A stretch of 64,000 nt of DNA from Rhodosorus marinus CCMP1338 (Eukaryota > Plantae > Rhodophyta): the NCBI GenBank assembly GCA_029953675.1, contig JAMWBK010000001.1, forward strand, positions 1,736,001 through 1,800,000. The letters are read 5' to 3'. Every line of letters starts with the position of its first letter. Position 1 is the stretch's first letter. Position numbers and translations under genes: made by a program. Positions 6,190 through 44,488 of this stretch are shown one piece after another. The notes under the pieces are model-generated. The model was given only the letters and a program-made list of their open reading frames with translations, had not been told where the DNA came from and did no database searches.

Positions 6190-7429
6190 CTACGTAAACC
6201 AGAACGAGACACTGCAGCTAATGTCCAAGCTAACCACGAAGTGCCACCACTTCGGTGGCAGGTAGAGCATTTCTCCAGCGTACAGAACCAGTTTGAACCC
6301 TCTCGCTTGCCGGTAGAGAGGAAATCTGGATTCGTCAGGACGAAGCACGTCCACCTGGCTTGTGTTTCCAAACATCGTGTCCTCCGCGAATGGATACAGG
6401 TTTAGGAATTCCTCCGGTGGAAAGACAACTACGAGCTTGGCTCCAAACACCTATGAAGGGATTAGAGCTTTGGAGTCGGATTTCACGCTATGAATAGAGA
6501 GCTGACGAGACTCGCTAGCGACCTACCTGACATAGTAGGTTGTGATATGGATCATGGTGAAGAGGAGTTTGAGTCCCGGATGGTCCCAGCCACATGTTGA
6601 CAACTGCTTCTGATGAAGAATCCCCTAGGCTTGCAAACTCTGGTTCGATGATATCACTGAGAAGGGAAGGAACTTGTTCAAAGAGCTGGTGCTGTGCTAG
6701 GTATCCCCTGGATTCGCCACGGAGATGTTGCTCCACAAAGTCGCTCATGGGAATCAGCTGAGTTTCGAAGCTAGGATCTGTGTACTTAGAGCCAAGCTCC
6801 ACTGGTACCCATCGATGGCCATACTCAGCTTCCCAAAAGCTAAAGTCGTTCCATTTTCTAAACGCTGGCCATTGCCTAACAACCCCCGAGATGATTTGCG
6901 GACCTTTCCAGAATATACGTGAAACGAACTGCGCAATCGAGGGACGCTCTATTGAAGGTATCCTTTCCACGAGATTTTGAGTTTCCATCTTATGGCCCGC
7001 GATTTCCCGAATTCTCTCATGCCCTAGCAATGCCATCGGCTCGGGATGAACTCGCAAAGCTCCAGAAAGTGTCGCTAACTCGTCAGCAAATGATGAACAT
7101 AAGGACTTGAATGAGGGATGGCCGAGAATCAGCGCTTCATCAAGAAGTCGAACGGAATCAGTCACCGAGGTGCTCTCCCTCAGCGCCAGTTCGACGCTGA
7201 TCGCGCTCAACTTTAACCTCAACCTTGTTTCACATTCATTCCTCTGCCCTTTCTCGTGCAATTGGTTCCATACCTCCCTCCTTGAACTCCAAAGCACCTG
7301 AAGCGGCTTCTTCACCTGAATATCCTCATTCTCTATAAGAACCTCCAGGCGTCGTGCATGCTCCGCGGCGTTCCTTAGGACTTTCACCCCGGAAGCCATT
7401 CCACACGTTTTTAAAGGGGCCTTCACCAT
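6190..7429 (-). CDS. JMJD5: JmjC-domain 2-oxoglutarate oxygenase, JMJD5/KDM8-like, 2 exons
   Basis: VPVELGSKY, YLAQHQLFEQVP.L..DI, WLGPSGTQTPLHHDPYHNLLCQV (HxD) and LYLPPKWWHFV (distal His). Intron 6451-6526 is GT-AG. Confidence 0.88.
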
Positions 7430-7715: not shown

Positions 7716-10700
7716 TCATTGTTCAAACTTTGGAGAAGCGGATGTGACGGTTTCCTTCCAATACTCAGATATCAGAATGTGAATGGACTTAAATACACGG
7801 TGATCGCACACAGCTTCAGCTCTTTTGCAATCACGTTTGGTCTCCCCCAAGAACCGAACCACTTCCGATGCGAGCGCAGAACAGATGCAGTTCCAAGGAA
7901 AGTTGGCCAGTCGTGCGATGAGCAGACCACGCTAGTAGGTGCGATTGTGAGAACGGCGGAATGGCATCACCACTAGCCAAACTTTCTGAATCAAAAAACA
8001 CCTCATCTGTACAAGCTTTTAATAGAGAACCTAATTTCCTAGGGATTAGCGAAGCAGCAGCCTCACCACCTAAAGCAGCCACACTTTCCTGAGCTGCAGG
8101 TACCAATGATGCGATTCAGCGACTTGTCTCTGAAGAGTAAAGCTCTGTCTTCTTGCACATTCCTACGAGGATGCTTTTAGCTAGAGGCCCTTCTTCCTTC
8201 ACGAGTGCCAGTGCTAGATTCCTTGCCCTTCCCAGCTCTGCAGCAAAAATTGCCGAGGCTAGTGGAGGAGTATCGATGTCCTCTGCGTGTGATTGCAGGA
8301 GATCAAGCCATTGCACTCGAGCTCCACCCACAAATGCCGCTACATCGTCACTGAATGATTTGGTTGACTTGAAGAATACGTTGGTAACGTTCTGAACGAC
8401 ATGAGACAAGCTCATGCCTCCATGCAAACTCAACCTTGAGATCCTCGATGGGTCGAGCAAGCCGTTGAGGGGATCTGACCTCGCAGCCTTTGCCAATTTC
8501 GAAGAGTCAACCGGTTTGAGAGCCAAACAAGCTCGAACTGGACTGTCGCAGTCCTCCCCATCCATCTTAACGAAGAACTCTTGATACTTGGAAAAACTTT
8601 TCACGCCAAACAGCCCGTCAAAAGGGTCAATAATCCTATTAAATCATATTTTCAGAGCCGCACAGTCAGCACCCGTAAGGCATGCGTGGAACGCCTATAA
8701 AGCTGGAAACTTGTATGGGAATAACTACCTGAGAATGAAATCCAAAGCCCGCAACTGTTTATCCTCTGGGATCGGTTTAATTGGAATTGAATCCGTATTG
8801 GCTCGTTCCCTTGTCGTCTCCACTCCACCTACGAACTTTGCAGCCAACGACAAGGACAGCTGCAGCCTGTGAACGATTTCACGAAACACTATTGTGAAAT
8901 CCGACCACGGAAGGTCTTGCGATGCAGCCTCTTCGCTCAGGAGGCCCAACCTTTTCGTCACTAGCTTTTCCATGTTCTCATGATAGTCCATTGGATTTGC
9001 GCCCGCGTCGTAAGTCGAAACGTAGGGGTCTCCTCTGTTGTCAAAGGGAAAAAACGACCTCCACTCGTCAATGAGGACATCTCACGGAGCTCAAGACGCG
9101 TGCTTTCAATTACCCTTTTAAACCTGGCTCATCTTCGTCAGTAGCGAAGTGTAATCCACGATCAACCGCGAGACGCGCAATCTCGTCTAGTGTGCCCTCG
9201 TCAGCATCCATATAGCCGTACTTAATCGCCTCAACATCGTAGTCTCCAACGCAGGGGCTAAAAAAGCTGTAGAAGTCAAGAAGTAAGATTGCATTCCCTT
9301 GCATCCCATTGCTTAACAGCTGGCAAGCTCATTCGTTTTGCATGTGCTCACTAGTTCTGTTCCTTTTCATCAGCCATTATGATCATCGGCAGGTAGTCCA
9401 TGATAGACGATGAGATACCATGCTCGGAAACAAACGTCTTGTTCTTCAGGTCGTTCCAGTTGTAGTTGGCGCTCCCGCGAAAGTTATGGCGCAAGCCAAG
9501 CGTATGACCAACCTAAACAGCGTGTAACTCCAAGACCGTCAGTGCGCAAATCAGCCATGCGCGGCGTGCGAGAATTTCTTGCCCGTTTACCTCATGCATG
9601 GTCACATCCGTTACCCCATCCAGCACGAGGTCCTCAACGGACTCATATGATTGCCTTGCAAAGGCTGCTGCCATTAAGCTGATCCGATTCATGTGCTCTT
9701 CTGCAATCACGCGCTGAAAGGAAAGTCTCGAGTTCAACCTCGGACGTATGCGAAATCCTGTTGAGGCGCGTGAGTAACGTTCTGTCAAAGACCAGTGACT
9801 CGTTCTTCACCCCCCTCGGCTTTGCTGTTACAGGAGGCAGGCGCTTACCCGGTACTTTTCCATTTCGAAGCAACCAGTATCTTTGGGTCCAGGTATTCAG
9901 CCAGCCGTGGGTGAACACAATATTGGCTCGGAGAATTTCACCCGTGCGTGGATCGACATCAGCGGGTGCGATCGCAAATGTTTCATCCAAGTCAGCTGAC
10001 CACGAAATGGAGCTGAACCGGGCATCTCCAGCATCAAAGTCGTCTGGAAAATCTGGATCACTCTGTTGGTTTAACACCCGTCAACTTCAGACTACGTGAA
10101 AAAATCCAATTTGGCCGCAGGCCAGCGATTACTGACTTACGGGGACCACAGCTTTGATTGCATCCTTGAACCCAGCAGCTTCGAATGCCTTCTGCCAGTT
10201 TTCAACTCCCTTTTTCATGGCCGCGCGAAGATTCTCGGGAACGGACTCATCAATATAGTAGATGATCTGCCCTTTTACATCCGTTATCTTTCCACCAGCC
10301 TCGCGTTTCCTTTCCAACCTCCTCCTGGATTAATATCAAGACGTGACCCTGATTAGTTCGAACTTCTCGTCTCTAATTCAAAGCGCAGTTTGGAAATAGA
10401 CAAGATCGGAGGATTGCGTCAGAACAAGTTCTGATGAATACCTGGTGACCATTTCCTTCTTCCCAGTGCCAGGATCCCGCCCATCCAAACTAACATACGG
10501 TATAGTGAAGAAACCCAGTCGCTCGTCAGCATATCTTGCCTCCATAGGTTTATCAGGTAACATCATTATCGTAAACTGTATGTCCACCGGAACGAGGACC
10601 TCCACGTCAGGAGCTTTGTCGTCGGTTGCAGGTAGCTGGGACTTCACCTCGACGTTTAAGTTCATCGGGAAAACAGATACGCCTGAGATCCTCGATTCAG

Positions 10701-11641: not shown

Positions 11642-12600
11642 GGTCCAATGTCTAGGGATCAGGTATCCCTTCAGTTTCAAAGCACGCTCATGGCGCCTTC
11701 ATCGATCCCCACAACCATCGGATCTCATCGCTCCAATTCGACCTGCATATCCTCGCTAAACAGAGCTCATCAGGATCCAAAACCCACGAAAAATGCCTTT
11801 GCGTGTAATCCTTAACAAGAGATTGCGTTCAGAAAGCTCTTTCCAAAAACCAGGAGCTCTTTGCTCTTTAAATCCAGTTCTAATACGTAACCCTCGCTAC
11901 GATCGCACAAGCACGCCTCCATCCAGCACGTACCCTAAAGCATCCATCCACCACAGAGAGCACAATCAATACTTCACCGCCATTCCCCTATTTATCTTTT
12001 TTCATGTTCTTTTCAACCAACCATTGAATCTAACATATATCAAAATTCAAAGTATTCAAAAATAATTGTAAAATATCTCAACAAGACATTTATTCATTGG
12101 ACTGATCAATACTTCTTATCCAATATATTTCATTCAAATAGTATCTAACCAATGACATACTACATACGAACTAAAATTCCTATTTTACAATAATTACAGG
12201 CTATCATAACCAATGAAATCTGCTCTCGTGTCCCACTGGCATATCTAATAAATGACATATTTCTATGAATATAACAAAATACATGAAATCTTCTAATTGT
12301 ATATACGATAATATACCTCATTTTAGAGTATATATATTGTATATACTTCATAATATCGTCTTTTAACAGAATTATGTTGATTGACTTTCGAATTATGGTA
12401 TATTTTATAAGTTTTATTCTAGATGACATTTATGATCAAATTTCCAAGGGCGGGTTTTTAAAGCGAAGGCTGAATGAGTACTCTATTTCTTTTATTTTTA
12501 CTTTTTGATGGTCGTTTTGGGGGAATGGGCGTTTTTGGATATCAAAAGGCAAAATGTTTCGTTTTCTTGAGAAAGATTGAGGGAGTTGATGAGGATGGGG

Positions 12601-12617
12601 AGAGGGAGAGGGAGAGG

Positions 12618-12705
<88 letters not shown>
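12601..12705. repeat. (GA)n microsatellite, about 100 bp
   Basis: Read directly; it produces the spurious ERERER/SLSLSL ORFs. Confidence 0.98.
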
Positions 12706-12711
<6 letters not shown>

Positions 12712-13121
12712 GGTGCGCGCGTGCGCACATGGATTTTGGGATTTCTACGAGTTGATATGTCTCGGAAGAAAGGCAAAGGCGGGTTTTGGGGAATAGATTC
12801 TTTTGGTTTTGGGTGATTGGGAGGGAAGTAGTTAAGTTATGATATGATTCATGTGATATGTTTTGCAGAGGTTTCTTTTGAAAAGATTGATTGGGCTGGT
12901 TTAAATCTGGAGTGCAGCATCGTCTGAAGGAACTGGGATCGACGGGTTTAGGGTTTTGGTAGACGCCGGGATTGATGTGATCGATCGGTGACTACGTTCT
13001 GGGGAACTTGTGGTTGTACGCTAGTGAGATATGGCACTATGGACTTGAGCCTAATGGCAGAGACGTATTGGTGACTCAAGCACTGTTTTGTTCTCCGCTC
13101 GCACCTCCAACCCCGGCCAAC

Positions 13122-15241
13122 ATGGAGGCTGCCTTCGTAAATGGGTTTGGATTAACTGACGCGCATGGGACCAAAGCATGTAAATGTTTCGGAATAAGAG
13201 ATGGCGTGGTGGACGTGGTTTCTGCGAACAGTAGTCAGACTCGGCGCACAGTCCTTGAAAGCGAGGTCACGAAGCCTCTGAAGAGATGTCGATCAGTTTT
13301 GGCAAAAATGGAGATCGCTGGTTCTCTGCTTTGCGGCCGAAGCCAGAAAGTTCAAAACGGGCTTTACATTGAGTCGTCCATAAGGTATATCGAAACGAAA
13401 AGCAGTTTTGGGTATGGCACACTCATGCGTGCTTGGAACAGCCTGAAGGAGAGCATAGGATGGTCGGAATATACCACAACAGAAGCCAGAATGCTCGGAC
13501 TTCCTTTAAGGACCTTGAGAGAATCTGAACGTTACGGACGACATGTAGTTTGCGACCCAAGGGTGAGTGTCACATTGGATGTATTGCGACCTTGTTTTGC
13601 GGGACCCTGGTATGCGGACCAGGGTCCTGCAGGGATGCCCCACCCGCTGAGCATGACGTTGGTTTTTCTGAAAGGTTGACATGCTTCTGTCCCAGGCTAT
13701 TGCAGAGCTTTCAAGAATTGCGGGTGACTTGAATGTTCCGAAGCCGAGTGCTCCAGAAAGCTATGGAAATCCAGACCACACGATTGAGCTACCTCGACTG
13801 CCAGCTGCTGGTGAGCATCCACGGCACACGGCAGCGTCGTCTCACGCAGGACGTCACTAATTGTACAAGATTCGTTGACAATTCTCAACAGGCAACACAA
13901 GAAGCGTTGCAGCGAAGTGTCCAAACGTAGAGGCTCACCGAAATGGAGATCGCCACCCCAGTTTGATTCTTTGGATGAATGCTGATGGTCGAACGGGAGG
14001 CGGCCAATGCCAAGTTTGCTGCGGATCTGAGGGAAAGCCAATTCGATATTCGGTTTGGTATTCCGGTAATTCTGCTCTTCTGTACAGACGTCGTGAAAAG
14101 GTTCAGGGGTCTAATAAGTACGTGCTAGACATCGCCGTGAAGCCTAAGGTAAAGGGATGCAGGAACACAGTTGGCGAAGAGGGAGTCGTGGACCAGGATG
14201 GAGTGCCAGTGGGAGGCTACGTCATGAGCGCCGACAAATTGGAAGAGCCCATGGTCGAGGGAAATCACGTGTGTGCTCTCCTAAAGGTTCGTCAGAACAC
14301 GGTCAAGGAGCAATCGCTGTCAATTCAACTCACAGAAGTCTCGCTGTTCACTGCGCAGAATCTGCACAGGGCGGACGGTTCCAGGACAAAGTTCCGAACA
14401 ATAGGACACCTGAACTCTAAAGACCCCATTGAGATTCTAGAAATTGCGGATAGAATGTCAAGGTCTGATAAGAGCTTAACCCAAGCAAAGCTGTGCAGCT
14501 GGATGACCAAGCAGGCGATCCATTCCGGAGACGAGTGCGAGGACCTGCTGTACACGAGGATGCTGTCAACGTCGGGAATGGTTGTTTCGAGCTGGAAGCA
14601 GACCAATGGAAAGTCCGGGCAACCTCTGTTCCTGCCCAATGGTTGGGAGCCCTTGGCTCAGAGGTGGATATTATTTGATCTGGATGACTTGCAGATGCTC
14701 TGTGAGGCTGGTACACTATTGAGCACATCGAATCTCTGAGCTGGTGTACGAGCACTACTGAACTGGTTCTGTTTCTTGGGTGGGCGTAATAGTTGTGAAT
14801 ATTGCTTGCAATAAAGTGAATGCTGCTGTCCAGAGCGATGTGAATCTCAGCGGGCGACTGGCTGTCGTGCAGACGGGTCCGAACGGACTGCAGGTTTGGT
14901 GCGAGCTGAGGGAAGTGAGGGAGAAGCCCAGAAAGTGGGTTGCAGAGCACAGTACCAGGGAGTGGTATAAAAGACTGGGACGGAAGATTTTGAGATCGGC
15001 TCGGAGCGCAGGGGCGCGCGGAGGATCTGTACGAACCTATGTATCTCTTTGCTTGTGGAGAACGTTGAACTGATGCTTGATCTCATCTCACTCCTTTGTG
15101 CAGGTGGACCTTGCTTCCTATGCGGCTGGAAGATTTGGGAGAAGGCCAGGATGGAGAGTACTAGAGCGTGGAGATATTTTCAGGTCTAGGCTGTTGTATG
15201 CTCGAGACGAGCGAGGCCCTAACAGGGACCCTCGATTATGA
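13122..15241 (+). CDS. Putative plastid-targeted protein with CHC2-like zinc finger and RepB'-like archaeo-eukaryotic primase domain, 5 exons
   Basis: MEAAFVNGF start. GT-AG introns 13563-13695, 13811-13891, 14711-14816 and 15029-15103 join one open frame. Motifs: CPNVEAH..HPSL..CQVC, ILFDLDDL, AVVQTGPNGLQVW, DLASYAAGRFGRRPGW. Confidence 0.65.
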
Positions 15242-22200: not shown

Positions 22201-23705
22201 GAGGGAAGATTGTGGTCTCCTCATCATCCATGTACTTGGTGAAGTCCTTCGCGAACTCCTCTAGCATACGCAAAAGCACAATTTTCTCCACTCCCCGCCC
22301 GTCATCAACGGCTTGCCCTGACGCAAGCATCGCCTTGAGTTTCTGTTGCAGGGCCACCAACGTTTCTCGTGCTTCCGTTGGGTCATCCTTTTCTGGAAGG
22401 CCAGAAACGTTTGTCTTTCCTTCGCTAAGCCGCTGCTGTAGCTCCTTCTTCAAAATCTGCACCTCACCAGCCACTCGGTATGTCAGCATCTTCTCCAAAA
22501 AGGCAAACCTTTCTGCTAGACATTTAAGCTGTGCGTTGTCAAACGGGTCCACGTGTTTTGTGAACTTCAAAAGATCCTACCCAACGAACGTCGAGACAGC
22601 CCGAAACGATGATCGAAACAAAAAAAGTTCATGTAAGCAACCTAGGCGGGCAGTCCAGATAGGTCAATAGCAGCCCCCGAAAAGGAACGAATACAATACG
22701 CTAAGCCTCTCGAGCTCTGTTTTTGCTTCGACTATTGGTTATTCCTTCACAAACGAAAATCCGGGAAACAAGTAAGGAGTGTTTTCAAAGACGTACCGCG
22801 AGCTCAATGCGTATGGCCTTGTTGATGTGGGTAATTTCGACGAGCGGGTTTGACTTGATCTTTGCTGCCTTCTCAAAGGCAGGGAACACATTGCACAGGT
22901 CCGACCATTCCGACGCTGAAAGATCATGTGCAATGCTAGAGGCGATCTCAGCCAGCTGGTCTTCCGTGCTGTACTTTTCAATTAACCCCAAAAAGTCAAT
23001 GCGTTCTCCTTTTGACAGAGCTCTAACAGTCCAGGTCAAGACCGGTGTGGCAAACATCACGGCGAGCATACCAACTAGCAGCTTGCCTTGCTCTGCTTCG
23101 CTGAAAATATCATTGAACAGGGGTAACAGGACTTTCTCCTCCTCGTCTAGATGCACATTGACGCAATCAATCAGCTGAGATAGCTTTTCCTGCTTGAGGT
23201 CCCGGATCGTCCCCTCCCAATCTGTCTCGGATTTTTTCGGACTGCCAATCTCTTTTTGTAGAGTTCGCAATGCCTCAGTTATCTGATCGAAATACTCTTC
23301 CATATCTTTGTGCTTGTGTTTTAGCACGCTGATGTAATGCTTCGCTGAGGGGTTCGATTTCTCCTTAGACTCCTCAAGCTTCACCATTAGGGCTGGACAA
23401 AGAACAGACTCCTCGGACTTGCAGTGCTTGTCCATCATGCTTTTCAAATAGCTAATACGGGCCAAAATTCCGCCATAGAACTGCGCCGTCGAGCTCACGC
23501 TCACGTCCGAAATCGTTCTCCGGAGCAACTCTAAATTTCGTCTGATCGCCTTGTGGACGTTGAACATCTCTGCCAAGGGCTCAATCTGTGTCGAATTCTG
23601 CGCGGCATCGCCATTTTCAAATCCATCCTCGATTATCTTGAGGCGCTTTTGAGCTGGCCCTTCTCTGTCCAGCTCAACGTTCTGGGTACGCCCCACAAAC
23701 TCCAT
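19281..23705 (-). CDS. BTS: BRUTUS/HRZ-like E3 ubiquitin ligase: three hemerythrin domains, CHY zinc finger, CTCHY, RING and zinc ribbon; many exons
   Basis: Hemerythrin motifs HKAIR..HCKSEE..HLDEEE and HKAIR..HSDE..HLTQEE. CHY: GCKHYQRRCKVRAKCCGKLFTCRLCHD. CTCHY: YHCHSCNVCRVGKGLGIDFFHC. RING: CPIC..CGHLMHKHC..CPVC. Ribbon: CNDC..HFLYLRCSFCQSHNT. Confidence 0.92.
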
Positions 23706-41405: not shown

Positions 41406-43070
41406 TTACTTGAAGAAACTCGTGAGCAGCTGTTGCTCAAGCTTTCCGCGCTTCCGCGAGCGGCCAACGAATTTATGCTTGTGTACATTCCCTTCGTCCC
41501 CACTGGGCTTCAGCGATAGCTCAGGTTTTCGCTGTGGACTGGCATCCACGCTTTTAGGCAACACTCCGCTAACCTCATCGATACATCCGGGGTTCTGCCC
41601 AGCTCTCTGTGAATCGGTTCGTCTTACGCTGCCATCACTCATAAAGATCCCGAAAACCTCGACTGCGTCAGTCTCGAGACTCTCTCCAGGAGTAGTTTTG
41701 GAGAGCTCAGGATCTCCGTATAGCTCGTCATTCACATTGCGGCTTGTCCGTTTCTGTTCACCACTCTCGGACTCTGTCTGTTTTCTGCTTCTAGGACTGC
41801 TCATCGTTCCCAAGAAGTCGGTCCGGCCACTCTCTATGGTGTCACAAGCTCTGTCGGAGTAATCACGGCTACCACTGACATCGTTCTTCAACTCTGGGCG
41901 GTTCCGCTTTTGACTGGCAATCTCAGATTCTTTTCGTTTTCCGCCGGAAGGGCTACCGAACTTGCCGAAAAACTCAACCATGGCCGCTCTCTCATCGATC
42001 AAGCCTTTGAAACTTGACAACAGGGCAGTATTTTTGGCAACAGTATCCTCCCCAACCGTTGGTACAACTCTCTTCGGTCGTAGGAATCCCACCCATTCGA
42101 GTAGCTCAGAGTAGGACGAGTGTTCACTATAAGGCACTCCGTAGATCTTGAAGCAGCCCTTCTCCTGAACGCTCACTGTGCCTTTCACGTTCCAGCTCCA
42201 ACCAGTGGGTACAAATCCAACCACTCGTTTGAAATAGGAATCCTTACGATACATGTCTCGTCGCCGGAGGTTCTCAGTCTTCATGATCGCTTCCATCTTC
42301 TCATAGTTTGGCTTGAATCCCCAAGGAACAGATTGTATGAACGCCTCCCACGGGGTTACATGGACAAACGTCTCCGAGACGTTCGTCGTGAATACTCGTT
42401 CATAATAGTCAAGTTCCAGGAGACTCAAAATGCTAGCTTTGGTGTCAGTGATACCGATCTTACACCCCAGTCTTCTCGACAGGGCTTCTAGTACCCTTTC
42501 CTTACCGATGAGGTATGTGGAAATGAGGAACAGTACCGGTTCTCCTCCAGCGACTTCCCCCTCCGCAAGCGAAACCAACGTTTCAATCGCTTGGTCTTGT
42601 GCGGGGAAGACATACTTCTTGTTGCAGTAGGTCGTGTCCAAATACACTGCATCGAACTGATTATCAGAGCCAAGCTGCTCGAAGAGTTTCATTTTGGGGT
42701 GGTATCGCATGTCACCCGTGTGAAGATATCTTTTCCCATCAACGGTTTCGAAAAGGAACTGAACAGATCCAGGACAGTGATTGGCGTCCAGAAGCGTCAC
42801 GTTCAAACCCACCTCTTCCTTGATCGCTGTTCTAGTACTCATTGGAAGCGCAACAACATATTGCTCGCCGACTCCCATATGTCCTATAAGCAGACGAGCA
42901 GTAATCTCCGACGCATAGATAGGCTTCCCCTTCCATCGATGAGTAAGGCCTCCATAGTGGTCGGCATGGAAGTGCGTGAGGAAGAGAGCTTCCACCCACG
43001 ATCGAATTGGAGGGCGAAACCAATCCACCAATATCTTGGTTCCAGGAACTCGGTTTCGTTCTTTAACCAT
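41406..43070 (-). CDS. SNM1: DNA cross-link repair nuclease SNM1/PSO2 family (metallo-beta-lactamase/beta-CASP), intronless
   Basis: FLTHFHADHYGGL, DANHCPGS, LHTGDMR, YLDTTYC, IGKER, FVPTGWS and VPYSEHSSYSEL. Disordered C-terminal tail. Confidence 0.93.
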   Translation of the reverse strand: MVKERNRVPGTKILVDWFRPPIRSWVEALFLTHFHADHYGGLTHRWKGKPIYASEITARLLIGHMGVGEQYVVALPMSTRTAIKEEVGLNVTLLDANHCPGSVQFLFETVDGKRYLHTGDMRYHPKMKLFEQLGSDNQFDAVYLDTTYCNKKYVFPAQDQAIETLVSLAEGEVAGGEPVLFLISTYLIGKERVLEALSRRLGCKIGITDTKASILSLLELDYYERVFTTNVSETFVHVTPWEAFIQSVPWGFKPNYEKMEAIMKTENLRRRDMYRKDSYFKRVVGFVPTGWSWNVKGTVSVQEKGCFKIYGVPYSEHSSYSELLEWVGFLRPKRVVPTVGEDTVAKNTALLSSFKGLIDERAAMVEFFGKFGSPSGGKRKESEIASQKRNRPELKNDVSGSRDYSDRACDTIESGRTDFLGTMSSPRSRKQTESESGEQKRTSRNVNDELYGDPELSKTTPGESLETDAVEVFGIFMSDGSVRRTDSQRAGQNPGCIDEVSGVLPKSVDASPQRKPELSLKPSGDEGNVHKHKFVGRSRKRGKLEQQLLTSFFK

Positions 43071-44488
43071 TCCCAACCACCACAAGAAGTGTCCAAGCGA
43101 ACAAGATCAGACACCACACCAACTAAACACAATTGTCATAGCCAGACATTTCCTTCTTACTGTTTTTCTTCATTCAGATAGCTTCCAACCTCGGCGTCAT
43201 CCGAAACAAAACCATTGGTCCAACCCTACTTAGCATTTCTCTTGTTCAAATCTCAAAAGGCCTCTCCTTGAATACAAGACCGACGCTCCACCTTCTCACT
43301 AGAAAGACCTCAAGAAACAAGCACAAAAGGCCCGACGATGCTCAGTAAACGAATCCATGCTGGCCTTTGAAGACGATACCACTTTACATTGCTAAACGAG
43401 GAAGATGCCAAGCACAAAGCGGACTGGAAGTATCCGTACAAGAGTAACTTTTTTTTTTTGCAAAAGGATTTCTCTAGTTGCCTCATTTGACTGTTGTTTG
43501 TTCGAATGAGCTGTTGAAAGGTTAGTGAGAAACCCACGGCCTGAGTCTGTTCAAGAGAACGAAGCACGACTGGTGTTCGTACTTTCGAGCATTAGTTATT
43601 GCATTCAACTGATCCAAGAAGCCCTTTGAAGATGATACGGAGTCTACCGGAACTTCATCTGGTCGACGGAAGATATCCACTGAACGTGAACTCTTGGAAG
43701 TCACTCTGGTCAGGATATTTATCATTCATCGATGCACCAGTTCCATTGGAGGGGTTCATGAACTTCCTACAGTCCGCGTTCGTCAGAGAGTCGTCTTTTG
43801 GTAGCTCGACGGCCATCCATGTATAGAGAGAACCAGGCTGTCCTTCTGGAATCAAGCATACTACTGCTCTCGGGCATTTGCCTAAGTAGAAATACATGAT
43901 CTCTTCAACGCTGATCCTTTGATGGCTCAATCCAAACCACCGTCCTCGAAGTCGAATAGACTACCAGCACAGTCATAATCCTAGAGGCGCGGTGACTCGA
44001 GCCTATTCACCAGGTTTGAGGCTACGGACTGCTTTTGCGTTCAGGTGAGTGCCAAAAACAATGTTTGGGGCTTTACTCTCTCCTGGAATTTGAATCACAT
44101 CTGAGCTCGTCTGCTAAATGTACTCTAAGCAGACGGATGTCTACGTGGTGGGTCAAGGCGCAACCAGTCCCACTCTTCAGTACTCGACTATCGCTTTAGA
44201 ATTTTAGAAAACCCCAGACACCTGTCCGCATCTTTCGCAAGCGGTTGGAAACCTTGGCCGCGCGTCACCTTATCAGTGCGTCGTTGCAAGGATGTTGAAA
44301 CGCTCACGGTGAGAACAATCTTTCAGGACGAATCCGCAAACAGAAACACTCTTCGCTTCATTCGAGCATTCGATACCAGAGGCATAATCCTTCTTGTCAC
44401 AACCTCAACGGGAAATTTGACCCCTGCTAGTCCAGACTGAACTCCGCATTCAACCTCTGCCTAATGGAATCGGTTCAAGAATCGTTGA

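What the first reader, a model, noticed from the sequence alone, without database searches (positions are those of the whole stretch)
13122..15241. Spliced nuclear gene for a plastid-targeted zinc-finger plus plasmid RepB'-type primase
Seen: five exons with canonical introns form one frame. It starts with a red-algal-type presequence (MEAAFV), then C-P-x4-H-x5-HPSL...C-x2-C (13918-14022), then ILFDLDDL, AVVQTGPNGLQVW and DLASYAAGRFGRRPGW. Knowledge (recalled, not searched): the IncQ plasmid RSF1010 primase RepB', an archaeo-eukaryotic primase, carries LVLVDDL, LVVETSPKNYQAW and DPASADSRHYGRLAGF in the same order, and the third motif has identical spacing. Phage/bacterial primases use CHC2 zinc fingers. 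Inference: a plasmid- or virus-derived primase was captured by the nucleus, gained introns and a transit peptide, and may prime or restart plastid DNA replication beside or instead of DnaG. Here the zinc finger is N-terminal, unlike PrimPol. The six-frame track hides the gene because it is split across frames.
Basis: partly seen in the sequence, partly recalled or inferred. Interest (0 to 1): 0.85.

Follow-up and report, generated by a model that had tools for sequence, protein, structure and literature searches.

The report
Phage-derived primase gene in red alga
A spliced, expressed nuclear gene of the red alga Rhodosorus marinus encodes a DNA-primase-like enzyme whose only non-eukaryotic relatives found are in uncultured bacteriophages; it may prime organelle DNA replication, but where it acts in the cell is unproven.

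Summary
The gene is real. The window is Rhodosorus marinus nuclear DNA, and the CDS 13122-15241 (+) equals the annotated hypothetical protein NDN08_005397. Transcriptome proteins from other Rhodosorus cultures support every junction.

The 558-aa protein has three parts: a winged-helix-like N domain, a DnaG-type CHC2 zinc ribbon, and a C-terminal archaeo-eukaryotic primase (AEP) domain. D424, D426 and R526 are invariant, and D515 nearly so, across 129 relatives. No Pfam, NCBIfam or PHROG model covers the catalytic domain.

Structure searches return AEP enzymes first: LigD polymerase, Prim-PolC and viral primases. A profile-profile test against RepB' gives 78% probability across all three motifs. 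However, the architecture is not RepB'-like: there is a zinc ribbon, no helix bundle, and no plasmid setting.

Relatives fall into two groups. One is uncultured phage genomes of about 75-80 kb, where the gene sits beside an SF2 helicase. The other is a eukaryotic clade of unnamed taxa. No relatives appeared in plasmids, cultured phages or GTDB genomes.

Plastid targeting rests only on an N-terminal phenylalanine motif, and mitochondrial or nuclear roles remain open. This is a new variant of a known kind and moderately interesting.

The parts
13122..15241 (+). Complete CDS, six exons, 558 codons plus stop. It equals the GenBank hypothetical protein NDN08_005397 of Rhodosorus marinus.
   Evidence: the six-exon translation is identical to P0001.
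13122..13562 (+). Exon 1 (441 nt). Covers the ATG, the low-confidence N-terminus and most of the winged-helix-like domain.
   Evidence: The first in-frame ATG follows an upstream stop. Donor is gtgagt.
13563..13695 (+). Intron 1 (133 nt, GT..AG).
   Evidence: The junction DPR|AIAEL is kept in transcript proteins P0002/P0003.
13696..13810 (+). Exon 2 (115 nt).
13811..13891 (+). Intron 2 (81 nt, GT..AG, phase 1).
   Evidence: The junction PAAG|NTRS is kept in P0002/P0003.
13892..14286 (+). Exon 3 (395 nt). Covers the zinc ribbon, the disordered linker and the start of the AEP domain.
14287..14358 (+). Intron 3 (72 nt, gttcgt..gcgcag).
   Evidence: These 24 residues are absent from P0001, P0002 and P0003.
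14359..14710 (+). Exon 4 (352 nt). Ends just after motif I.
14711..14792 (+). Intron 4 (82 nt, GT..AG, phase 1).
   Evidence: The junction LCEA|VVN is kept in P0002/P0003.
14793..15028 (+). Exon 5 (236 nt). Contains motif II.
15029..15103 (+). Intron 5 (75 nt, GT..AG, phase 0).
   Evidence: The junction GGS|VDLA is kept in P0003.
15104..15241 (+). Exon 6 (138 nt). Contains motif III and the TGA stop.
13122..13190 (+). Residues 1-23 (MEAAFVNGFG...). Unstructured N-terminus with Phe at position 5; a candidate phenylalanine-based plastid signal, unproven.
   Evidence: pLDDT below 50. The F-motif rule comes from PMC7038456. F occurs in residues 2-12 in 9 of 18 eukaryote-clade members against 13 of 98 others.
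13344..13734 (+). Residues 75-160 (the span includes intron 1). Conserved alpha/beta N domain, winged-helix-like, with E84, R130 and G139 present in at least 90% of relatives.
   Evidence: Model pLDDT is about 77-95. Foldseek matches to ArsR/CzrA, MarR, CprK and the pPS10 RepA winged helix have probability 0.5-0.99. Conservation.
13918..14019 (+). CHC2 zinc-ribbon ligand motif, C195-P-x4-H201...P208-S209-L...C225-x2-C228.
   Evidence: C195 is C in 127 of 129 sequences, C225 in 128 of 129 and C228 in 124 of 129. PF01807 is hit by 27 of 79 relatives at E<=0.01 and 46 of 79 at E<=10.
14203..15205 (+). Residues 290-547 (the span includes introns 3-5). AEP-like catalytic domain.
   Evidence: pLDDT is mostly 86-98. 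Top Foldseek matches are AEP enzymes.
14665..14688 (+). Motif I, W-I-L-F-D424-L-D426-D. This is the classical AEP D-x-D on a beta strand.
   Evidence: D424 and D426 are invariant in 129 of 129 sequences; D427 is variable.
14846..14899 (+). Motif II, LSGRLAVVQTGPNGLQ468VW. Gln sits where most AEPs have His.
   Evidence: G466 is invariant. Position 468 is Q in 85 of 102 non-eukaryote-clade members and H in 22 of 27 eukaryote-clade members. It aligns to RepB' VVETSPKNYQAW.
15104..15157 (+). Motif III, V-D515-LASYAAG-R523-FG-R526-RPGW-R531.
   Evidence: D515 is D in 126 of 129 sequences. R526 and R531 are near-invariant. It aligns to RepB' DPASADSRHYGRLAGF.

Best explanation
This is a domesticated phage gene now living as an ordinary six-exon, expressed nuclear gene of Rhodosorus marinus. 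It encodes a three-module DNA primase of an undescribed family within the archaeo-eukaryotic primase (AEP) superfamily.

Shown:
- The gene structure and its expression.
- The domain order: winged-helix-like N domain, DnaG-type CHC2 zinc ribbon, disordered linker, AEP domain.
- The conservation of the metal- and nucleotide-binding residues.
- The phage setting of the non-eukaryotic relatives examined.

Inferred mechanism: the winged-helix domain and zinc ribbon select a DNA site or template, as the zinc-binding domains of DnaG and T7 gp4 do. The tethered AEP domain then uses D424, D426 and D515 to bind divalent metal, and R523, R526 and R531 with Q468 to hold the incoming nucleotides. It makes a short primer that a replicative polymerase extends.

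At least one phage genome with this gene also encodes a Toprim-DnaB primase-helicase, and the protein carries a DNA-binding winged helix. The ancestral job is therefore more likely site-specific initiation or restart priming (as for RepB', ColE2 Rep or P4 alpha) than bulk lagging-strand priming.

In the alga it most likely serves an organelle genome. The plastid is the best single guess because of the N-terminal phenylalanine motif, but the compartment is not established.
For: - Gene and expression: the six-exon model equals GenBank P0001. Transcriptome proteins from two other Rhodosorus cultures span every junction. Between cultures, identity is highest in the catalytic core (91-94%) and zinc ribbon (90%) and lower in the linkers (66-81%).
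- Nuclear setting: the gene is single-copy in the window and flanked by ordinary host genes, namely cupin/JmjC, alpha/beta-hydrolase, hemerythrin, SNM1, DnaJ and APC5.
- Family size: 224 relatives at E<=1e-3.
- Zinc ribbon: PF01807 is hit in 27 of 79 relatives at E<=0.01, and the ligands are near-invariant.
- AEP fold: two independent AlphaFold models were made, the second with pLDDT 83.8 overall and mostly 86-98 in the C-terminal domain. Both return M. tuberculosis LigD polymerase first (probability 1.0, E 4-5e-3), then Prim-PolC and the CAPP Prim-Pol.
- Viral structural matches: the top hits are a phage DUF927 protein (E 1.6e-4, probability 1.0), an abalone herpesvirus replication protein, and pithovirus and cedratvirus DNA primases.
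- Motifs: D-x-D, G466, D515 and R526 are invariant or nearly so in 129 sequences.
- RepB' link: hhalign probability 78%, E 1.8e-5, over 103 columns. The reversed control gives 0.5%. Sixty column shuffles reach at most score 22.7, against 38.6 for the real alignment.
- Phage replication context: in ten IMG/VR viral contigs and contig L016, the gene lies between a RecU resolvase and a phrog_16 SF2 DNA helicase, with Sak4 nearby. The same helicase adjacency is seen in the 80-kb contig L033.
- Eukaryotic clade: relatives sit in intron-poor eukaryotic contigs in conserved synteny with SARAF and Spt5. Others come from poly(A) or transcript-sized contigs.
Against: - No enzymatic data exist for any family member.
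- Foldseek E-values are modest (1.6e-4 to 5e-3) and TM-scores are low (0.3-0.4 on the target). Part of the reason is that a multidomain model was the query.
- No curated AEP profile hits the protein.
- Motif II has Gln instead of the usual His. However, Gln is the family majority and is also what RepB', an active primase, carries.
- A phage carrying both this gene and a Toprim-DnaB primase-helicase shows it need not be the replicative primase.
- For the organelle part, the Rhodosorus protein has no N-terminal extension over the phage-like homologue P0013. Its N-terminus is not depleted of acidic residues.
- Monophyly of the eukaryotic sequences is only moderately supported (63 of 100 NJ bootstraps), and the sister group is unresolved.
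Confidence: 0.68

Rival explanations
1. Same enzyme, but imported into mitochondria. It would prime replication of the minicircular mitochondrial chromosomes that are peculiar to Stylonematophyceae such as Rhodosorus, perhaps at their conserved non-coding region.
For: - Rhodosorus marinus has multipartite mitochondrial minicircles with a conserved constant region, and their mode of replication is stated to be unknown (PMC10250338).
- A site-specific, RepB'-like or initiator-type primase with a winged-helix DNA-binding module would suit many small circles that each carry one conserved origin-like region.
- Some relatives have arginine-rich N-terminal extensions, for example P0022 and P0024.
- From general knowledge, kinetoplastids, the other classic minicircle lineage, use AEP primases in the mitochondrion.
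Against: - The family is present in many other eukaryotic contigs that are not known to be Stylonematophyceae, so it is not specific to minicircle-bearing taxa.
- The Rhodosorus N-terminus begins with a phenylalanine motif typical of plastid rather than mitochondrial signals (PMC7038456).
- The minicircle paper makes no link to this gene; the word 'primase' does not occur in its main text.
Confidence: 0.15
2. The enzyme works in the nucleus or cytosol as a repair or repriming primase-polymerase, like PrimPol or bacterial LigD and Prim-PolC. It would have no organelle role.
For: - The closest solved structures are the repair polymerases LigD-Pol and Prim-PolC.
- Motif I (F-D-L-D) is of the classical D-x-D type.
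- The Rhodosorus protein has no N-terminal extension over the homologue P0013.
- Two eukaryotic homologues (P0004, P0009) were called without any presequence.
Against: - In phages the gene sits in a replication module next to a helicase, not with Ku or ligase.
- Most eukaryote-clade members have 40-120 extra N-terminal residues relative to phage proteins.
- In-frame upstream ATGs exist for P0004 and P0009.
- The phenylalanine motif is enriched at eukaryotic N-termini.
Confidence: 0.12
3. The protein no longer polymerises anything. It would be a DNA-binding factor (winged helix plus zinc ribbon) that kept a dead AEP domain, or an endogenous viral remnant drifting towards pseudogenisation.
For: - Motif II His is replaced by Gln in Rhodosorus.
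- No biochemical data exist.
- No curated model recognises the domain.
Against: - Every residue that is invariant across 129 family members is intact in Rhodosorus.
- Gln is the majority state in the phage proteins (85 of 102) and is present in active RepB'.
- The catalytic core is the best conserved part between Rhodosorus cultures, at 91-94%.
- Five introns, transcripts in two other Rhodosorus cultures and an intact 558-codon frame argue against decay.
Confidence: 0.05

Closest known systems
RepB' primase of IncQ plasmid RSF1010 (Pfam RepB_primase PF16793; PDB 3H20/3H25)
   Same: - It is an AEP catalytic core with no His in motif II: both carry T-S/G-P-x-x-x-Q-x-W.
- Motif III is D-x9-G-R-x2-G-[FW] with identical spacing.
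- The profile-profile match is 78% probability, E 1.8e-5, over all three motifs.
- RepB' is a site-specific initiator primase (PMC4434180). That role also fits the winged-helix and zinc-ribbon front end here.
   Different: - RepB' has no zinc motif and has a C-terminal helix-bundle domain (PMC4434180, PMC4538821). This protein has an N-terminal winged helix and a CHC2 ribbon, and ends about 11 residues after the catalytic core.
- The invariant acidic pair here is D-x-D, not RepB's adjacent DD.
- There is no PF16793 hit, even at E<=10.
- RepB' is absent from the top 50 structural matches.
- No plasmid homologues were found.
LigD polymerase domain and Prim-PolC of mycobacteria (AEP repair polymerases; PDB 2IRU, 2R9L, 4MKY, 6SA0)
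   Same: - They are the best structural matches in the PDB for both models, with probability 0.97-1.0.
- They share the classical D-x-D motif I.
- Two family members give weak PF21686 hits, the best at E 0.041.
   Different: - Sequence identity in the structural alignments is only 12-17%.
- There is no Ku or ligase association.
- The protein has a zinc ribbon and a winged helix, which LigD lacks.
- It sits in a phage replication-module context.
Zinc-binding domain of bacterial DnaG and T7 gp4/Twinkle primases (Pfam Zn_ribbon_DnaG, CHC2, PF01807)
   Same: - It has the same C-x-H...C-x2-C ribbon with the P-S-[LMF] signature, placed N-terminal to the catalytic domain and joined by a flexible linker.
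- 27 of 79 relatives hit PF01807 at E<=0.01.
   Different: - The catalytic domain behind it is AEP, not Toprim.
- The Rhodosorus sequence itself does not reach the Pfam threshold, and its C-to-H spacing is longer than in most relatives.
Phage and NCLDV AEP primase(-helicase)s (DUF927/D5-type; pithovirus and cedratvirus primases)
   Same: - They are the best matches among predicted viral structures: A0A6J5MH03 at E 1.6e-4, and pithovirus primases at probability 0.8-0.9.
- They are viral replication genes.
   Different: - Those proteins fuse the AEP domain to a helicase. Here the helicase is a separate neighbouring gene in phages and is absent from the algal locus.
- No PHROG family covers this protein.
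Eukaryotic PrimPol and herpesvirus UL52
   Same: Each combines an AEP domain with a zinc finger needed for priming (PMC10415149 abstract).
   Different: - Their zinc finger is UL52-type and lies C-terminal to the AEP domain.
- No sequence-level match was found.
Known organelle primases of red algae: cyanobacterial DnaG (plastid) and Twinkle (mitochondrion)
   Same: It is a candidate for the same task, and it would be another replication enzyme of phage ancestry in an organelle, as Twinkle is (PMC3914683).
   Different: - It has an unrelated fold (AEP against Toprim).
- It is not listed among Cyanidioschyzon organelle replication enzymes (PMC3914683).
- Its localisation is untested.

Membership tests
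Archaeo-eukaryotic primase (AEP) superfamily | Catalytic fold: two-sheet alpha/beta core with an RRM-like module. | tested here: met
   In two independent models the top PDB hits are LigD-Pol, Prim-PolC and CAPP. The top viral hits are a phage DUF927 protein and NCLDV primases, with probability up to 1.0 and E 1.6e-4 to 5e-3. The strand-helix order around the motifs fits the fold.
Archaeo-eukaryotic primase (AEP) superfamily | Motif I, D-x-D, on a beta strand. | tested here: met
   F-D424-L-D426. Both Asp residues are invariant in 129 of 129 sequences.
Archaeo-eukaryotic primase (AEP) superfamily | Motif II, s-x-H. | tested here: inconclusive
   The G-x-Q/H-x-W hairpin is present. Rhodosorus and 85 of 102 non-eukaryote-clade members have Q, while 22 of 27 eukaryote-clade members have H. 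RepB' also has Q.
Archaeo-eukaryotic primase (AEP) superfamily | Motif III acidic residue. | tested here: met
   D515 is D in 126 of 129 sequences and lies at the end of a strand.
Archaeo-eukaryotic primase (AEP) superfamily | Match to a curated AEP sequence model. | tested here: not met
   There is no Pfam, NCBIfam, PHROG or PDB sequence hit for the protein or the family profile. Only two weak LigD_Prim-Pol hits were found among 79 members.
Archaeo-eukaryotic primase (AEP) superfamily | De novo primer synthesis. | not testable with these tools
   This needs a biochemical assay.
RepB' / RepB_primase family (PF16793) | Sequence membership, i.e. a match to the family model. | tested here: not met
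   There is no PF16793 hit at E<=10 for P0001 or for 79 relatives.
RepB' / RepB_primase family (PF16793) | Remote homology of the catalytic core. | tested here: inconclusive
RepB' / RepB_primase family (PF16793) | Architecture: no zinc motif, and a C-terminal helix-bundle domain. | tested here: not met
   An N-terminal CHC2 ribbon is present. The chain ends at residue 558, about 11 residues after the core. RepB' features are taken from PMC4434180 and PMC4538821.
RepB' / RepB_primase family (PF16793) | Plasmid replicon context (RepA, RepC, ssi sites). | tested here: not met
   No homologue was found in 72,556 plasmids. The relatives examined are in phage-like contigs and eukaryotes.
DnaG-type CHC2 zinc ribbon (PF01807) | The four ligands C, H, C, C, with the P-S-hydrophobic signature. 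| tested here: met
   C195, H201, P208-S209-L210, C225 and C228 are present, and the cysteines are near-invariant.
DnaG-type CHC2 zinc ribbon (PF01807) | Match to the Pfam model. | tested here: met
   The match holds through relatives: 27 of 79 hit at E<=0.01 (best 1.1e-7). P0087 scores 27.5 bits and P0094 28.4 bits against a cut-off of 24.9. The Rhodosorus protein alone gives no hit.
Bifunctional Prim-Pol (PF09250) | Match of the catalytic domain to the model. | tested here: not met
   Only P0044 hits, and it does so with a separate extra N-terminal domain (residues 10-185) placed in front of the family module. hhalign of the family core against that domain gives probability 0.2%.
Rhodophyte plastid-targeted precursor | Phenylalanine-based motif at the very N-terminus. 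| tested here: met
   M-E-A-A-F5-V. The rule is from PMC7038456. F occurs in residues 2-12 in 9 of 18 eukaryote-clade members against 13 of 98 others.
Rhodophyte plastid-targeted precursor | Cleavable N-terminal extension ahead of the conserved mature protein. | tested here: not met
   Rhodosorus residues 1-28 align with residues 1-26 of the homologue P0013, so there is no extension. Other eukaryote-clade members do carry about 40-120 extra residues.
Rhodophyte plastid-targeted precursor | Demonstrated import or plastid proteome presence. | not testable with these tools
   No targeting predictor or experimental data were available.

The most novel reading that the evidence does not exclude
An undescribed phage primase family (winged helix, then DnaG-type zinc ribbon, then a RepB'/LigD-like AEP core) was captured once by an ancestor of a eukaryotic lineage that includes red algae. 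It would now be a third, independent kind of organelle primase alongside cyanobacterial DnaG and Twinkle. In this reading it acts as a site-specific initiator or restart primase in the plastid or, in Stylonematophyceae, on the mitochondrial minicircles whose replication mode is unknown.
Probability: 0.35. Interest if true: 0.75.

Novelty: new variant of a known kind. Interest (0 to 1): 0.6.

Why it matters
Organelle replication machineries are mosaics of bacterial and phage parts, such as Twinkle, the T7-like RNA polymerase and POP. Red algal plastids are thought to rely on cyanobacterial DnaG and DnaB (PMC3914683).

An AEP-type primase of phage origin that is fixed, spliced and conserved in a red alga would add a new component to that picture. 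The same holds for the sizeable but still unnamed eukaryotic clade that shares it. It would also provide a concrete candidate for how unusual organelle chromosomes are initiated.

Independently of the alga, the result defines a family of at least 224 proteins that no curated database covers. The family joins a DnaG-type zinc ribbon to an AEP catalytic core. This domain combination shows that the two primase worlds exchanged their template-recognition module. The family is a conserved neighbour of the helicase in a group of uncultured phages of about 75-80 kb.

Tried and rejected
**Searches that found nothing**
- Single-sequence and family-profile searches of Pfam, NCBIfam, PHROGs and PDB sequences gave nothing for the catalytic domain. 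The only NCBIfam and PDB hits (NifU, NSE2) were chance-level.
- The second and third word-indexed homologue searches, run with alignments, returned almost nothing new because candidate lists saturated.
- Pattern scans with eukaryote-type motifs found nothing in IMG/VR or in 185,579 GTDB genomes. A second GTDB scan with phage-type motifs was also empty, so the family is not a common prophage or chromosomal gene.
- tblastn found nothing in cultured phages or plasmids.
- The metagenome scan only re-found a known contig.

**Failed attempts to name the other eukaryotes**
- Cluster look-ups of the homologues and of neighbouring RPL8 and RFC proteins carried no organism names.
- An accession search of the literature was empty.
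- Comparing RPL8 with PDB ribosomes was uninformative. An apparently outstanding hit (11he) was an artefact of a duplicated segment in that chain.

**Explanations rejected**
- Contamination by phage or bacterial DNA is ruled out by five spliceosomal introns, a 3.8-Mb host contig, host neighbours and transcripts.
- A multi-copy transposon or viral island is ruled out because the gene is single-copy in the window with no viral neighbours.

**Could not be done**
- I could not inspect model coordinates, so clustering of D424, D426 and D515 in three dimensions was not checked.
Full report
**What is in the sequence**

An ATG is followed by MEAAFV, four GT..AG introns separate the exons, and the joined frame is open. 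All quoted peptides are present.

A homologue search identified the organism and the gene. The best hit, P0001, is 'hypothetical protein NDN08_005397 [Rhodosorus marinus]', 558 aa, on a 3.8-Mb contig. Two transcriptome-derived proteins from other Rhodosorus cultures (MMETSP; P0002, P0003; 81-87% identical) cover the gene.

Those residues correspond to a fifth intron, 14287-14358. It is 72 nt, runs gttcgt..gcgcag, and is in frame with no stop, so it could not be detected from frame alone.

With it removed, the six-exon translation is identical to P0001. The transcript proteins span every exon junction, which is indirect RNA evidence for the splicing. The gene is single-copy in the window.

Its neighbours are ordinary host genes: a cupin/JmjC protein, an alpha/beta-hydrolase, a hemerythrin-domain protein, SNM1/DRMBL, DnaJ, APC5 and a GTPase. 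It is therefore not contamination and not part of a viral island.

**The protein family**

No curated library recognises the protein. Pfam, NCBIfam, PHROGs and PDB sequences gave no meaningful hit, either with the single sequence or with a 13-sequence profile. Yet it is a member of a large family.

A profile search of 1.84 billion representative proteins found 224 members at E<=1e-3, 85 of them at E<=1e-30. Most are full length and share the same three conserved blocks.

Across 129 aligned members the following positions are conserved:
- The zinc ligands C195, C225 and C228 are near-invariant.
- D205, P208 and S209 are conserved in at least 95%.
- D424, D426 and G466 are invariant.
- D515, R526 and R531 are near-invariant.

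**Zinc ribbon**

Scanning 79 members against Pfam gave one recurrent family, PF01807 (Zn_ribbon_DnaG, CHC2). It was hit by 27 members at E<=0.01 and by 46 at E<=10. P0087 (27.5 bits) and P0094 (28.4 bits) are above the 24.9-bit gathering score.

Many distant members have the textbook C-x-C-P-x-H-D-D-x-x-P-S-M form. The Rhodosorus version (C-P-N-V-E-A-H...H-P-S-L...C-Q-V-C) is a spaced-out variant of the same ribbon.

**Catalytic domain**

A first AlphaFold model, built with 13 sequences, was poor (pLDDT 59). A second, built with 109 sequences, was good: mean pLDDT 83.8, with mostly 86-98 over residues 290-558.

Both models, searched against the PDB, returned the M. tuberculosis LigD polymerase domain first (probability 1.0, E 4-5e-3). 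Prim-PolC and the CRISPR-associated Prim-Pol followed. Human primase and the HSV helicase-primase complex appeared lower in the first list.

Against predicted viral structures, the best hit was a phage DUF927 protein (E 1.6e-4, probability 1.0). An abalone herpesvirus replication protein and pithovirus and cedratvirus DNA primases followed. All of these are AEP enzymes.

The secondary-structure order fits the AEP core:
- D-x-D lies on a strand.
- After a helix comes a hairpin carrying G-x-Q/H-x-W.
- After two helices comes a strand ending in D515.

E-values are modest and I could not inspect coordinates. I therefore regard the fold as well supported rather than proven.

**Is it 'RepB'-type'?**

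I then built an eight-sequence RepB' family alignment from seven further plasmids.

The tests of the 102-sequence family core gave these results:
- Against RepB' alone: 26% probability.
- Against the RepB' alignment: 78% probability, E 1.8e-5, over 103 columns spanning all three motifs.
- Against the reversed alignment: 0.5%.
- Against 60 column-shuffled alignments: at most score 22.7, compared with 38.6 for the real one.

The shared Gln in motif II and the identical D-x9-G-R-x2-G spacing in motif III are real and unusual.

Several points argue against membership:
- No member hits PF16793, even at E<=10.
- RepB' structures are not in the top 50 Foldseek hits.
- The invariant acidic pair is the classical D-x-D, as in LigD.
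- RepB' lacks zinc and has a C-terminal helix bundle (PMC4434180, PMC4538821). This family has the reverse layout.
- tblastn found no plasmid homologues.

My reading is that this is an unclassified AEP family whose motifs II and III resemble RepB' and whose motif I and overall fold resemble LigD-type enzymes. It works like RepB' may work, but it is not a member of that family.

**N-terminal domain**

Residues 75-160 form a confident alpha/beta unit. Its structural matches are winged-helix DNA binders: ArsR/CzrA, MarR, CprK and the winged helix of pPS10 RepA, with probability 0.5-0.99. Viral helix-turn-helix proteins also match.

A disordered linker (residues 256-284) separates the zinc ribbon from the AEP domain.

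**Where the relatives live**

One group is viral.
- Ten IMG/VR viral contigs (up to 79 kb, 56-74% GC) carry the gene.
- In all of them, and in a 74.5-kb metagenomic contig, it lies between a RecU-type Holliday-junction resolvase and a phrog_16 SF2 DNA helicase. A Sak4-like annealing protein, a sigma factor and a MoxR-like ATPase are nearby.
- Further phage-like contigs include L006 (tail-fibre-like gene) and L004 (strong phrog_2045 hit).
- They also include a TARA ocean contig and an 80.5-kb contig where the gene again abuts the helicase.
- That last genome also encodes a Toprim-DnaB primase-helicase.

Nothing was found in cultured phages, plasmids or 185,579 GTDB genomes.

The other group is eukaryotic.
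- Four intron-poor contigs carry the gene next to a SARAF-domain gene. Three of them (L001, L008, L018) also carry Spt5, and RFC, RPL8 or RPS3 lie nearby.
- Two hits are transcript-sized JGI contigs, one ending in poly(A).

I could not name these eukaryotes.

In a crude NJ tree the eukaryote-type sequences form one clade nested among phage sequences. Bootstrap support is moderate (63 of 100) and the sister group is unresolved. Rhodosorus groups with transcript P0022 in 95 of 100 replicates.

The Rhodosorus catalytic core is 52% identical to the phage-like P0013 and 51% identical to the eukaryotic P0004. A phage-to-eukaryote capture followed by vertical descent is the simplest reading.

**Function**

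The helicase adjacency in phages, the DnaG-like ribbon and the intact AEP residues all point to priming. Two observations suggest a site-specific initiation or restart primase rather than the bulk lagging-strand enzyme. One is the winged helix. The other is co-occurrence with a separate Toprim-DnaB protein in at least one phage.

Conservation between Rhodosorus cultures is highest in the catalytic core and zinc ribbon. This is consistent with a working enzyme.

**Compartment**

Rhodophyte plastid signals carry a phenylalanine at the very N-terminus (PMC7038456), and MEAAFV fits this rule. Similar A-F-V or F-L-A-P strings recur at predicted N-termini of the eukaryotic clade. F occurs in residues 2-12 in 9 of 18 of these members, against 13 of 98 others. 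Most of them also have 40-120 extra N-terminal residues.

Three points weaken the case:
- Those starts come from automatic ORF calls.
- The Rhodosorus protein has no extension relative to P0013.
- Its first 60 residues include six acidic residues.

Known red-algal plastid priming is by DnaG, with Twinkle in mitochondria (PMC3914683). Rhodosorus also has mitochondrial minicircles of unknown replication mode (PMC10250338), which makes a mitochondrial role a live alternative.

I put the plastid at roughly 0.4, the mitochondrion at about 0.15-0.2, and a nuclear or cytosolic role at about 0.1-0.15. The remainder is dual targeting or unknown.

**Verdict**

It is overstated on 'RepB'-type' and 'plasmid', and unproven on 'plastid-targeted'.

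The family is uncatalogued and the domain combination is new to the curated databases I could search. The finding is a new variant of a known kind, of moderate to good interest.

Noticed in passing
window 12600-12706: A (GA)n microsatellite of 53.5 copies, 92% matches, lies about 420 bp upstream of the start codon. It produces the long ERERER/LSLSLS pseudo-ORFs in the six-frame listing.
   Followed up: partly
window 12001-14000: This is the lowest G+C block of the window (43.5% against about 47-53% elsewhere). An AT-rich stretch around 12160-12500 lies between the upstream gene and this gene's promoter region.
   Followed up: no
window 13008-13121, and protein P0002: In another Rhodosorus culture the transcript ORF continues 47 codons upstream of MEAAFV to an earlier ATG (MAGLMYFIGDQ...). 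In this window the same frame is open back to 13008 but has no ATG. The 5' end may therefore differ between strains.
   Followed up: partly
protein P0044 (761 aa): One family member carries a bona fide Prim-Pol domain (PF09250, E 8.7e-49, residues 10-185) fused in front of the complete family module (residues 202-751). That gives two AEP domains in one protein.
   Followed up: partly
L033 1-732, with the family gene at 8001-9572: An 80.5-kb phage-like contig encodes both this family's gene (beside a DEAD/ResIII helicase) and a Toprim_2 plus DnaB_C primase-helicase. It also carries Tet_JBP, ParB_N, radical-SAM/SPASM and Pyr_excise genes.
   Followed up: no
L021-L030 and L016: A conserved gene block runs MoxR-like ATPase, orf502, sigma-70 region 2, RecU, family gene, SF2 helicase, orf532, Sak4. 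It is shared by about ten uncultured high-GC phage genomes of about 75 kb. In most of them the family gene is on the opposite strand to its neighbours.
   Followed up: partly
L001, L007, L008, L018: Unnamed intron-poor eukaryotic contigs (46-59% GC) keep the family gene next to a SARAF-domain gene; Spt5 is also present in L001, L008 and L018. The organisms could not be identified from any source name.
   Followed up: partly
window 41406-43085 (-), 22785-23705 (-), 6515-7429 (-): Other long ORFs in the window match SNM1/DRMBL DNA-repair metallo-beta-lactamase, a hemerythrin HHE domain and a cupin_8 (JmjC-like) domain. They are fragments of intron-containing host genes that I did not model.
   Followed up: no
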